Below, in pieces: positions 8,065-10,956 of a stretch of DNA of 64,000 bases. Numbering within the stretch: position 1 is the first letter of the stretch; each line of letters starts with the position of its first letter. The stretch comes from Scyliorhinus canicula (lineage: Eukaryota), in the NCBI RefSeq assembly GCF_902713615.1, contig NC_052168.1, positions 5,766,001 through 5,830,000 of the forward strand, read 5' to 3'. A program made the position numbers and the translations under genes. The notes beneath the pieces are model-generated. The model saw only the letters and a program-made list of their open reading frames with translations, ran no database searches and was not told where the DNA came from.

Positions 8065-10956
8065 TCAGTCACTCTCCCCCAGGGTGAGCTTGTCAAACAG
8101 GTACTCTCCCGTCCCATTCTCAGGGGCTCCCAGTCTCTTCAGGTTGGTGATGTGATCTCCGAGCTTCTTGATCATCTTCACTTGTTCATCCAAGTAGTGA
8201 GTCTTCAGGAAGTCACAAAGCTGAAAAAGACAAAGCAGCATTTTATGTCCAGCAGCAGGCAGAGGATTGTGGGAGCTTCCCTCCAGACAGACGTCAATGT
8301 TATTCTACCCCTGGAAACTAGGGCAATACCCATCTCACCCAGCCCTTCCCATCAGCAGAAGCAAAGCCATGAGGTTTGGAGATCCTCCAAATAGGTTCAA
8401 GACCTACAAGGTTATGAACTCCAATATACCCCCAAAAATAAAGAACTCACATGAGGGTCAGTGTTCCCAGAGGAGAGTTTGTGCAGATCCAGCAGACTCT
8501 GGTTCACATTCTTCTCCATCTGCAGAGCTCTCTGCATTGCCTCCAGACCATTGCTCCACTCATCCTGCTCTGGTTTCTGAAAGAGGAAAGGCAGACAGCT
8601 CATTTCCAATGGATTCAAACACACGGGGAAGAACAACCAGAAATTCATGTTCCCAGGAACCAAAGCATCACAAAAGGATATAGGGTGTGATTGTCCAGAA
8701 AGTGAACAAAGTCCCCGAGCGAGAATATTTAGCCGAAAAATCAATGACTATTCAACGTGACTTGCGTTAAACAAGAGGCCTGAATGGGGAGCGCACAGCC
8801 GAGGCCACAGCCTGTTCTGTACAGTGGGGAGCACTGCTCACCGCAACCCCCATTATGGCAAGACATGGAGGCCATTTTCAAATGGCTCCCCCTGTCCCCA
8901 TGCCAGGCAGGCTCAGCCCAATCACATGTGGCAAAGTGCCAGCCTGGCATCTGGGTGCCAACCTGATAGTGCCCATGCCAGGATGATACACAGGTGGCAC
9001 TTCTCTGTGCAAAGCTGACACTACCCTGCCCAAGGGCATGCAGTTAGGGGCCTCCATATCCCTGGGCAAACCCCCCCATGAACACTGTTCCATCTCCATT
9101 GTGGCACCCAGTGCTGAACAGCACTCGCCCAAGGTCTGAGGCAAAGGGGATGAAACCCAAAGGGTCGGATACCTCAGGAATCTGTTATTATCTTGTTCTC
9201 ATATACAGATTTGCTAAAATGAGATTCCTCATTATGGGCAGGATTCATAATGACAAATCTCAAGGCATTGCAAGCCGGAGGATCCCAGGAGTGGGGTCTA
9301 CCAGCTTTCAAAGGAAGCTCTGCACCGAGCTGCTTTTCCAACACAGAGTGGCCATGGGATTGCACTGACAGAATTACTGCATTAAACCATGGCATTGTCA
9401 AAGGGGATGCAGAGATCTATCAAGTCCAACCTTGACATCCCCCAGGATGATGCGGCCTCCACGTTTATTCTGGAATTCCATCAGTTTCTCAGCGTGTTCC
9501 CGTTCCTCATGTGACTGCTCCTTGAAGAACTCAGCAAAGTGACGCAGGGCAACATCATCCCGGTCAAAGTAAAAGGACTGAAGGGAGAGAGAATTTTACA
9601 AATCACAACTGTTTCCCACCGAAGTCTCAATTTATCAGCTAATTAGTTTTAAATTAATTCATCAACCATGAACAGGTCTTCTCTAACCAAGAGATCAGGA
9701 TTATGGTTCATATCCAGCATTAGAATGATGTCTAGTATTCTCCCACCATTCGGAGGAGATGGGGAACCAAGACTCCATCTGTGGACAGGCAGATGTAACA
9801 TTTCTCAGCACTGCGTCTAAAGGAGATTCCCTGATCCTGGAAATGTTTATACCCGAATAAATACACAGTGACTGTTCCATACAAAAGCTGGTTGTTGGTG
9901 AAACCTTGTGGTGCACAAATTGTTGAAGCACAGAATCCCTGCACCACAGAAATAAGCCATTCAGCCCATCTAGCCAACACCAACCCTGAACAGGCACCCT
10001 ACACAGCCAACACCCCCACCCTATCCCCATGACTCCACCCAACTGCCACAGTTCCAGGCACCGAGCAGCAATTCAGCATGGGCAATTCATTTATCCTACA
10101 CATCATTTAAGTGTGGAAAGAAATCAGAGCACCCAGAGGAACCCACAGACAGAGGAGATTGACTGCATGTTTACACAGTTACCCAAAGCCATAATTGATC
10201 CCAGATCCTTGGCACCAAGAGCACTAAACACCATCATGGTTACTGCATTTCAAAATGATCAAAATCATTGGGCAATAACAGAAACACTCCATTTAAAACT
10301 TAAAAAAAAAGTTAATCTATACAGGACACAGGCTTCACTGGCTAGGTCAACATTTGCTGTCCATCCTTAATTGCCCCAAGATGGTGGTGAGCTGCCTTCT
10401 TGAACTATTGCCCATCTGGTGTTGGTATTCCCAATGTGCATAACCCACATAATGGAACAAGAAATATCCTTCAAACTAGTTTACACCAAGTGTTCAGAGT
10501 GCACTGAACAACACCAGGTATGTGTTTCACTGCCAACTGGAAATGTAGATAACAAGCAGGGTCCCCAGCTACACTCACCCAACCCCATTGAAACTGGAGC
10601 TGGTCTAACGCTAACAACCACTTCCCAGGTTTCTGCTCCAAATTCAGGCAGCAGCCAGTTTCAGCCATTAAACCTCCCAATGGAGAGCAACTGCTACAAG
10701 GAGCAGTCCATTCACTCAACACCACCCAGAATGACACTGAAAACTCTCACTGCTCAGTGATTTCTTCAACTTGAGGAAATATAGTTTACAAAGTCACTTC
10801 ATTCAACTGGAGGAATTTAAGCTTTTCAGAAAGTTGACCAAACACAAAACTCACCATGGAGAGGTAAACATAGGAGGAATAGAGCTCCAGGTTGACCTGC
10901 TTGTTAACAGCATCCTCACAGTCCTTGTGGTAGTTCTGACGCACTTGGGAAACCAT
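8065..10956 (-). CDS. Ferritin copy 2, 176 aa (E131K variant)
   Basis: Exons 10855-10956, 9431-9577, 8451-8576, 8065-8220; GT-AG; open frame. Reads [18 protein letters not shown], ends GESD*. Confidence 0.95.

What the first reader, a model, noticed from the sequence alone, without database searches (positions are those of the whole stretch)
8203..8205. Copy 2: Glu->Lys charge reversal at the three-fold iron-entry channel (LCDFLKTH)
Seen: codon 131 is AAG here but GAG in its tandem twin (copy 1) and in copies 3, 4 and 6-9. Established: this position equals human H-chain E134 (frog M E130), which with D131 lines the 3-fold channel and drives Fe2+ entry. Inference: Lys subunits would throttle or alter metal entry in mixed 24-mers while keeping the ferroxidase site, acting as a modulatory subunit class.
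Basis: partly seen in the sequence, partly recalled or inferred. Interest (0 to 1): 0.72.

Follow-up and report, generated by a model that had tools for sequence, protein, structure and literature searches.

The report
Shark ferritin copy with lysine-lined iron channel
One intact gene in a catshark array of iron-storage (ferritin H) genes carries lysine where animal cytosolic ferritins carry the glutamate that draws iron into the cage; the same change recurs in other sharks, but whether it is used or merely tolerated is not shown.

Summary
Copy 2 (minus strand, coding exons 8065-10956) reads AAG at codon 131 (plus-strand CTT, 8203-8205). Copies 1, 3, 4 and 6-9 read GAG, and copy 5 also reads AAG. 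The residue aligns with human H-ferritin E134, the inner carboxylate of the LCDFxEx motif in the three-fold channel.

Copy 2 is not decaying:
- Its splice sites, reading frame and seven ferroxidase residues are intact.
- Its promoter is identical to copy 1's.
- It has only two lineage-specific amino-acid changes, against about 6.7 expected from its intron rate.

New here: the same Lys occurs in array ferritins of Scyliorhinus torazame, Carcharodon, Cetorhinus and Pristiophorus. It occurs in none of about 50 non-shark vertebrate ferritins sampled. Some great-white carriers also lack ferroxidase ligands, and other damaging changes (H62R) recur at similar frequency.

The copies are mosaics, so sharing between copies 2 and 5 fits gene conversion. 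Read data confirmed neither the base in a second individual nor a Lys transcript.

Best reading (about 0.5): a channel-weakening subunit variant tolerated in a highly redundant, reportedly ovary-expressed array. A selected modulatory subunit class remains possible (about 0.25).

Another note of this scan (s1-200325) flagged the same change in copy 5 of this window.

The parts
8203..8205 (-). Codon 131 of copy 2: AAG (Lys) in place of GAG (Glu). This is the inner carboxylate position of the three-fold channel motif LCDFxEx and equals human H-chain E134.
8065..8220 (-). Copy 2 coding exon 4 (codons 126-176 plus the stop). It contains D128, K131, T132 and Q138. An AG acceptor lies upstream.
   Evidence: Pfam PF00210 profile positions 114-141.
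8451..8576 (-). Copy 2 coding exon 3 (codons 84-125, including E104), with AG/GT splice sites.
9431..9577 (-). Copy 2 coding exon 2 (codons 35-83, including E58, E59, H62 and the lineage-specific Gly80), with AG/GT splice sites.
10855..10956 (-). Copy 2 coding exon 1 (ATG to codon 34, including E24 and Y31), with a GT donor.
11023..11030 (-). TATAAATA box of copy 2. It is conserved in all eight intact copies. CCAAT-type motifs lie upstream at 11070-11174.
   Evidence: The 220 bases before the ATG match copy 1 apart from the length of a C run.
7940..7945 (-). AATAAA polyadenylation signal of copy 2, about 120 bases after the stop codon.
32902..32904 (-). The same AAG (Lys131) codon in copy 5. 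Copy 5 is a non-sister copy with an unrelated intron 3 end and 3'UTR, and its stop codon is shifted by one residue.

Best explanation
Copy 2 is an intact member of the shark-specific tandem array of H-type ferritin genes. A single G-to-A change replaces the glutamate that forms the inner negative ring of the three-fold iron-entry channel with lysine. The gene keeps its TATA/CCAAT promoter, all splice sites, its frame and all seven ferroxidase residues. Its product should therefore fold and co-assemble with the far more numerous Glu-type subunits made from neighbouring copies (inferred). Each Lys subunit would put a positive charge at the constriction of one of the eight channels, where three Glu normally hold a hydrated Fe2+. 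That would weaken the electrostatic pull on Fe2+ and slow its delivery to the ferroxidase sites (inferred from published D131 and E134 mutants). The most likely status is a partial loss-of-function subunit variant. It would be tolerated because any one copy is diluted among dozens of normal ones. It would be carried between copies by the gene conversion that makes the whole array a mosaic. I do not think a subunit class maintained by selection is the most likely status.
For: - Sequence and gene model.
- Residue equivalence to human E134.
- Published role of the motif: LCDFxEx is described as strictly conserved in cytosolic animal ferritins. Three Glu134 bind one hydrated Fe2+, and mutating either channel site inhibits Fe2+ oxidation. 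D131N abolishes the rapid phase (PMC13088775). E134A lowers iron incorporation (Levi 1996, as cited in PMC8395497).
- Ferroxidase ligands are intact in copies 2 and 5.
- Constraint on copy 2: copy-2-specific changes are 34 in 2104 intron bases, 3 in 531 coding bases and 0 in 264 upstream bases. About 6.7 amino-acid changes are expected and 2 are observed (P about 0.04). pN/pS among copies is 0.2-0.6.
- Mosaic structure: 43 of 91 informative coding site pairs fail the four-gamete test.
- Redundancy: there are nine copies in this window, and more on both sides according to earlier notes. Other sharks are reported to have 179 FTH1-like copies, with ovary-specific expression of the main cluster (bioRxiv 10.1101/2024.09.09.611499).
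- Comparable noise elsewhere in the family: H62R occurs in 6 sequences of 5 species and E50K in 6 sequences of 4 species.
- Some carriers have other defects: great-white Lys carriers also have E59G or H62R.
Against: - E131K has the most carriers (9 sequences, 5 species) among recurrent minority states at highly conserved columns. Its carriers have the lowest load of other rare changes (mean 2.9 against a family mean of 4.35). This fits a maintained variant better than decay.
- Lys is absent from about 50 non-shark vertebrate ferritins sampled.
- The S. torazame carrier has an exon-4 peptide identical to copy 2's, so the variant may predate the split of the two catsharks.
- The biochemical effect of Lys at this site has not been measured in any paper I could find.
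Confidence: 0.5

Rival explanations
1. Lys131 subunits are a selected, shark-specific modulatory subunit class. Co-assembled with Glu subunits, they would tune how fast iron enters or leaves oocyte ferritin, much as L chains tune H-chain cages in mammals. Selection would keep the Lys codon against the homogenising gene conversion of the array.
For: - The same Lys is found in two non-sister copies here and in S. torazame, Carcharodon, Cetorhinus and Pristiophorus, which belong to three orders.
- Carriers in the catsharks, the basking shark and two of the three sawshark models are otherwise clean, with intact ferroxidase sites.
- The copy 2 coding sequence and promoter are under constraint.
- The array lacks other iron control according to earlier notes, so subunit composition would be a plausible place for tuning.
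Against: - Lys carriers do not form a clade and share no other diagnostic residue across orders.
- None was seen in about 38 orectolobiform, 11 Heptranchias, 5 Heterodontus and 5 Mustelus sequences, although that sample consists of 90% cluster representatives and is incomplete.
- Great-white carriers have lost ferroxidase ligands.
- E-to-K by a G-to-A transition is a common mutation type at other conserved Glu columns too.
- There is no evidence of expression.
Confidence: 0.25
2. Copy 2 is transcriptionally silent or a polymorphic, individual-specific copy on its way out. In that case the Lys has no physiological consequence.
For: - In the RNA-like contig set X9, the only 3'UTR contig of the copy 1-3 group carries copy-1 letters. 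Its depth is about 318, against about 100,000 or more on the shared exons.
- In the second individual (X5), the only contig over intron 3 differs from copy 2 at 8 places and carries the copy 1/3 letters at 8235, 8238 and 8244.
- That sample holds only 0.31-0.39 of copy 2's sampled words, against 0.48-0.64 in sample S1, which may be the source of the assembly.
Against: - The promoter matches the expressed-looking copy 1 apart from a C-run length.
- There is a deficit of amino-acid changes on the copy 2 lineage.
- Contigs show presence, not absence, and a filter removes human-like records.
- One spliced exon 3-exon 4 contig lay on copy 2's letters (joint 8220 to 8451, depth 10), though it cannot be assigned to the Lys form.
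Confidence: 0.2
3. The A is a sequencing or assembly error, or copies 1 and 2 are two haplotypes of one gene that were wrongly assembled in tandem.
For: There is no independent read-level confirmation of the base.
Against: - Copies 1 and 2 differ at 132 of 3400 aligned bases (3.9%) plus indels. That is far above allelic variation, and the differences are spread over the whole unit.
- The same codon is in copy 5 within a different sequence context.
- The same codon is found in independently assembled genomes of four other sharks.
Confidence: 0.04

Closest known systems
Vertebrate cytosolic H-type ferritin (human FTH1; bullfrog M/H' ferritin)
   Same: It has the same four-exon gene and a 176-residue ferritin-like domain. 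Exon 4 is about 78% identical to human FTH1, and all seven ferroxidase residues are present. The LCDF..TH channel helix is in register, with human D131 matching D128 and human E134 matching position 131.
   Different: Lys replaces the channel Glu, which PMC13088775 describes as strictly conserved in cytosolic animal ferritins. The gene sits in a multi-copy tandem array rather than being a single IRE-controlled gene; the missing IRE comes from earlier notes and was not tested here.
Shark ferritin H/L gene expansion (Greenland shark genome preprint, bioRxiv 10.1101/2024.09.09.611499)
   Same: This window is part of that kind of cluster: tandem, mostly full-length FTH1-like copies. The preprint reports that the clusters are shared between shark orders and that the main cluster is expressed in the ovary. 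The nearest database proteins are shark 'ferritin heavy chain, oocyte isoform-like' and similar entries.
   Different: The passages of the preprint that I read do not mention residue-level variants such as the channel Lys.
Natural D131N in Philippine tarsier mitochondrial ferritin (PMC13088775)
   Same: It is a natural loss of one of the two channel carboxylates in an otherwise intact, ferroxidase-competent animal ferritin.
   Different: It affects the other carboxylate (D131), neutralises the charge rather than reversing it, and occurs in a mitochondrial homopolymer rather than a cytosolic multi-subunit family.
Atypical sponge ferritin HdF2 with E134A (PMC8395497), and cyanobacterial SynFtn with Val at the E134 position (cited in PMC13088775)
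   Same: Both are natural ferritins without the carboxylate at the E134-equivalent position.
   Different: HdF2 has also lost its ferroxidase ligands. SynFtn is a bacterial ferritin that still transports Fe2+ rapidly with one carboxylate. Neither places a positive charge in the channel.

Membership tests
Ferritin-like domain (Pfam PF00210) | Match to the ferritin four-helix-bundle profile over its full length. | tested here: met
   The four exons of copy 2 match profile positions 2-21, 23-70, 76-113 and 114-141 in order. Exon 2 passes the Pfam cut-off and exon 3 sits exactly at it; exons 1 and 4 fall below it on their own. Full-length shark Lys carriers P0164 and P0175 score 151 and 134 bits.
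H-type (ferroxidase-active) animal ferritin | Di-iron ferroxidase residues E27, Y34, E61, E62, H65, E107 and Q141 (human numbering). | tested here: met
   Copy 2 has E24, Y31, E58, E59, H62, E104 and Q138 in the family alignment.
H-type (ferroxidase-active) animal ferritin | Twin-carboxylate three-fold channel motif LCDFxEx (D131 and E134). | tested here: not met
   Asp128 is present, but position 131 is Lys, giving LCDFLKT. This is the finding itself. The protein is an H-type ferritin by every other criterion.
H-type (ferroxidase-active) animal ferritin | Assembly into 24-mer cages and measurable Fe2+ oxidation. | not testable with these tools
   This needs expression and kinetics. The full-length spliced protein of copy 2 has no reference, so it was not sent to the folding tools.
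L-type (ferroxidase-dead) ferritin | Loss of ferroxidase ligands (for example Lys at E62) with nucleation carboxylates retained. | tested here: not met
   All ferroxidase ligands are retained in copies 2 and 5.
IRE-regulated ferritin mRNA | An iron-responsive element hairpin in the 5'UTR. | not tested
   Earlier notes of this scan report it absent from the whole array. I did not repeat the test.

The most novel reading that the evidence does not exclude
Sharks maintain a third kind of ferritin subunit that is neither H nor L. It is catalytically competent but has a positively charged three-fold channel. Its share in oocyte ferritin cages would set how fast iron enters or leaves. It would be kept by selection in several shark orders despite concerted evolution of the array.
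Probability: 0.2. Interest if true: 0.7.

Novelty: new variant of a known kind. Interest (0 to 1): 0.42.

Why it matters
The two channel carboxylates are treated as invariant in cytosolic animal ferritins, and they are central to current models of iron entry. A natural charge reversal at one of them, on otherwise intact genes and recurring in five shark species, offers two things. It is a ready-made natural test of how many carboxylates per channel are needed. It also asks whether heteropolymer composition can tune iron flux in a gene family that appears to have given up IRE control. If the variant is only tolerated, it still shows how much damage a highly redundant array can carry.

Tried and rejected
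- **Read evidence.** The single read-laying run used a second individual's DNA contigs, an RNA-like contig set, raw oligo-dT RNA reads and a related species.
  - The raw RNA run laid nothing.
  - The contig sets break at or next to 8205, and a human-likeness filter removes records.
  - So neither the base nor a Lys transcript could be confirmed or excluded. Seven junction contigs in X9 carry the Glu form. One spliced contig (depth 10) lay on copy 2's letters but cannot be assigned to either form.
- **Orthology of Lys copies.** The look-up of encoding contigs for the S. torazame and great-white Lys genes returned gene neighbourhoods (tandem ferritins) but no DNA, because the files are too large. 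Intron and flank orthology could not be tested.
- **Protein tree.** The tree of 84 shark ferritins was largely unresolved (7 of 81 branches starred). It neither forces nor excludes a single origin of Lys.
- **Donor of a conversion tract into copy 2.** Copy-2-specific changes cluster at 8113-8244. Read by eye from the alignment (no formal test), their intron states match no other copy in the window. Copy 5 has private synonymous changes 7 bases upstream and 20 bases downstream of the codon. Direct copy 2/copy 5 conversion is therefore neither shown nor excluded.
- **Coarse library search.** The exon-4 search of the 50%-identity library found six Lys carriers. Five look like degenerate mammalian FTL-like fragments and one is a mis-modelled skink gene. 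These were rejected as support for a functional class.
- **Short-fragment search.** The search with exon 4 alone gave only 6 proteins.
- **Literature.** A search for E134K, D131K, E130K or D127K in ferritin found nothing relevant.
- The full-length spliced copy 2 protein has no reference, so exact look-ups, folding and complex prediction with it were not done.

Full report
**What is in the window**

The window holds nine tandem ferritin genes, each with four coding exons. Copies 1-5 lie on the minus strand and copies 6-9 on the plus strand.
- Eight copies have complete 176-177-codon frames with GT/AG splice sites.
- Copy 6 lacks exon 1, has a broken exon-2 donor and several damaging substitutions, and is a pseudogene.

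The nearest database proteins are shark entries named 'ferritin heavy chain-like', 'B-like' or 'oocyte isoform-like'. Three Scyliorhinus canicula entries are 170-173 of 176 residues identical to copy 7.

A published preprint already describes this kind of cluster. It reports 179 FTH1-like and 155 FTL-like copies in Greenland shark, clusters syntenic with great white, and ovary-specific expression of the main cluster.

**The observation**

Copy 2 occupies 8065-10956 on the minus strand. Plus-strand CTT at 8203-8205 is AAG, codon 131. Copies 1, 3, 4 and 6-9 read GAG there, and copy 5 also reads AAG at 32902-32904.

phmmer against PDB chains aligns the exon-4 peptide end to end with human FTH1. 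The Lys falls on residue 135 of the 183-residue chain, which is E134 in the usual Met-less numbering.

A 2026 paper calls LCDFxEx a strictly conserved 'twin carboxylate' motif of cytosolic animal ferritins. It reports that three symmetry-related Glu134 hold one hydrated Fe2+ in the channel, that disrupting either channel site inhibits Fe2+ oxidation, and that D131N abolishes the rapid oxidation phase of human H ferritin (PMC13088775).

**Is copy 2 a working gene?**

- All seven ferroxidase residues are present.
- The four exons match the Pfam ferritin profile in order.
- The 220 bases before the ATG, including a TATAAATA box and CCAAT-type motifs, match copy 1 apart from the length of a C run.
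- Copies 1 and 2 are true paralogs. They are 96.1% identical over 3.4 kb, with differences spread along the whole unit.

With copy 3 as outgroup, copy-2-specific changes number 34 in 2104 intron bases, 3 in 531 coding bases and none in 264 upstream bases. At the intron rate about 6.7 amino-acid changes are expected, and two are seen (Glu80Gly and Glu131Lys; Poisson P about 0.04). Among all copies pN/pS is 0.2-0.6. Copy 2 has therefore been constrained or homogenised, and it is not decaying.

**Why two non-sister copies share the Lys**

Copies 1-3 share near-identical introns and 3'UTRs, whereas copy 5's are unrelated. The site is not a CpG.

The coding sequences are only 1-4% different while introns of different subgroups are barely alignable. 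In addition, 43 of 91 informative coding site pairs fail the four-gamete test. The array is therefore a mosaic shaped by gene conversion, or by recurrent mutation, and the shared Lys fits that general pattern.

A direct copy 2/copy 5 conversion tract cannot be shown. Copy 5 has private synonymous changes 7 bases upstream and 20 bases downstream of the codon. Read by eye from the alignment, copy 2's cluster of private changes at 8113-8244 matches no other copy in the window.

**Other species**

Searches of the 90%-cluster protein collection and of two large clusters found the same LCDFLKTHY motif in four other sharks:
- Scyliorhinus torazame: P0164, whose exon-4 peptide is identical to copy 2's.
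- Pristiophorus japonicus: P0175, P0281 and P0314.
- Cetorhinus maximus: P0289.
- Carcharodon carcharias: P0312/P0190, P0195, and the neighbouring fragment P0344.

About 50 non-shark vertebrate ferritins in the same lists have Glu, one has Asp and none has Lys.

In a 131-sequence shark alignment, I looked at minority states at highly conserved columns that occur in three or more species. E131K has the most carriers (9). Its carriers have the lowest load of other rare changes (mean 2.9 against a family mean of 4.35).

Against a special status:
- H62R, a ferroxidase ligand change, occurs in six sequences of five species, and E50K in six sequences of four species.
- The great-white carriers also have E59G or H62R.
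- No Lys was seen in the sampled orectolobiform, Heptranchias, Heterodontus or Mustelus sequences.
- Lys carriers neither cluster in the largely unresolved tree nor share another diagnostic residue across orders.

**Reads**

- In the RNA-like set X9, exons 3 and 4 have very high depth.
- Seven exon 3-exon 4 junction contigs carry the Glu form.
- The only 3'UTR contig of the copy 1-3 group carries copy-1 letters at about a thousandth or less of the exon depth.
- One spliced contig of depth 10 lies on copy 2's letters but cannot be assigned to the Lys form.

In a second individual (X5), the single contig over intron 3 is a mosaic of copy 1, 2 and 3 letters and starts just after 8205. That sample holds only 0.31-0.39 of copy 2's sampled words. 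This suggests that array haplotypes differ between individuals, but it is not evidence of absence. The tool warns that contigs drop variants and that human-like records are filtered out.

**Mechanism and verdict**

Shown:
- The codon and its equivalence to E134.
- The intact gene.
- The recurrence in copy 5 and in four other sharks.
- The mosaic structure of the array.

Inferred:
- The product co-assembles with Glu-type subunits.
- Lys at the constriction reduces the negative potential and metal binding of the channel.
- Fe2+ delivery to the ferroxidase sites therefore slows in proportion to the Lys share.

My best reading, at about 0.5, is a channel-weakening variant tolerated through redundancy and spread by conversion. 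A selected modulatory subunit class is a live alternative, at about 0.25. A silent or polymorphic copy is at about 0.2, and an assembly error at about 0.04.

The gene array is already known. The natural charge reversal in the twin-carboxylate motif was not found in the literature searched, so it counts as a new variant of a known kind.

Noticed in passing
window 38410-39753 (+): Copy 6 is a ferritin pseudogene. No exon 1 was found, the exon-2 donor is AA instead of GT, several conserved residues are changed (Arg to Pro and Gly to Ser in KRGGR, His to Leu before LCDF), and the stop codon is lost.
   Followed up: partly
window 32764-32766 and 33530-33532 (-): Copy 5, the other Lys131 copy, has lost the usual stop codon, which adds one extra residue (..EMDL). 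It also carries Lys83Gln and Thr122Ser. It is otherwise intact.
   Followed up: partly
window 63531-63533 (+), approximate: Copy 9 has Ser instead of Thr at position 132 (human T135), the residue that binds the second channel Fe2+ together with Asp131. The change is conservative, and frog ferritins also have Ser there. Copy 9 also carries Glu50Lys.
   Followed up: no
window 21119-21950: A GC-rich minisatellite lies between copies 3 and 4: a 55-base unit repeated 15 times at 96% identity. It accounts for the GC spike (0.65) in the composition profile.
   Followed up: no
window 8113-8244 (-): Six of copy 2's private differences from copies 1 and 3 cluster within about 130 bases across the intron 3/exon 4 boundary, and the Lys codon is one of them. 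This could be a short conversion tract from a donor outside the window, or a local burst of mutation.
   Followed up: partly
proteins P0312, P0195, P0344 (Carcharodon carcharias): The great-white Lys131 ferritin genes sit next to each other in a tandem array. They have additionally lost ferroxidase ligands (E59G in P0312; H62R with Glu64Gly in P0195). They are candidates for ferroxidase-dead, channel-altered subunits, or for decaying copies.
   Followed up: partly
shark ferritin alignment: Many CpG-type replacements (Arg46 to Cys or His, Arg60 to Gln or Trp, Arg40 to Gln) and His62Arg recur in 5-9 shark species across the array family. This indicates heavy recurrent mutation or exchange in these arrays.
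   Followed up: no
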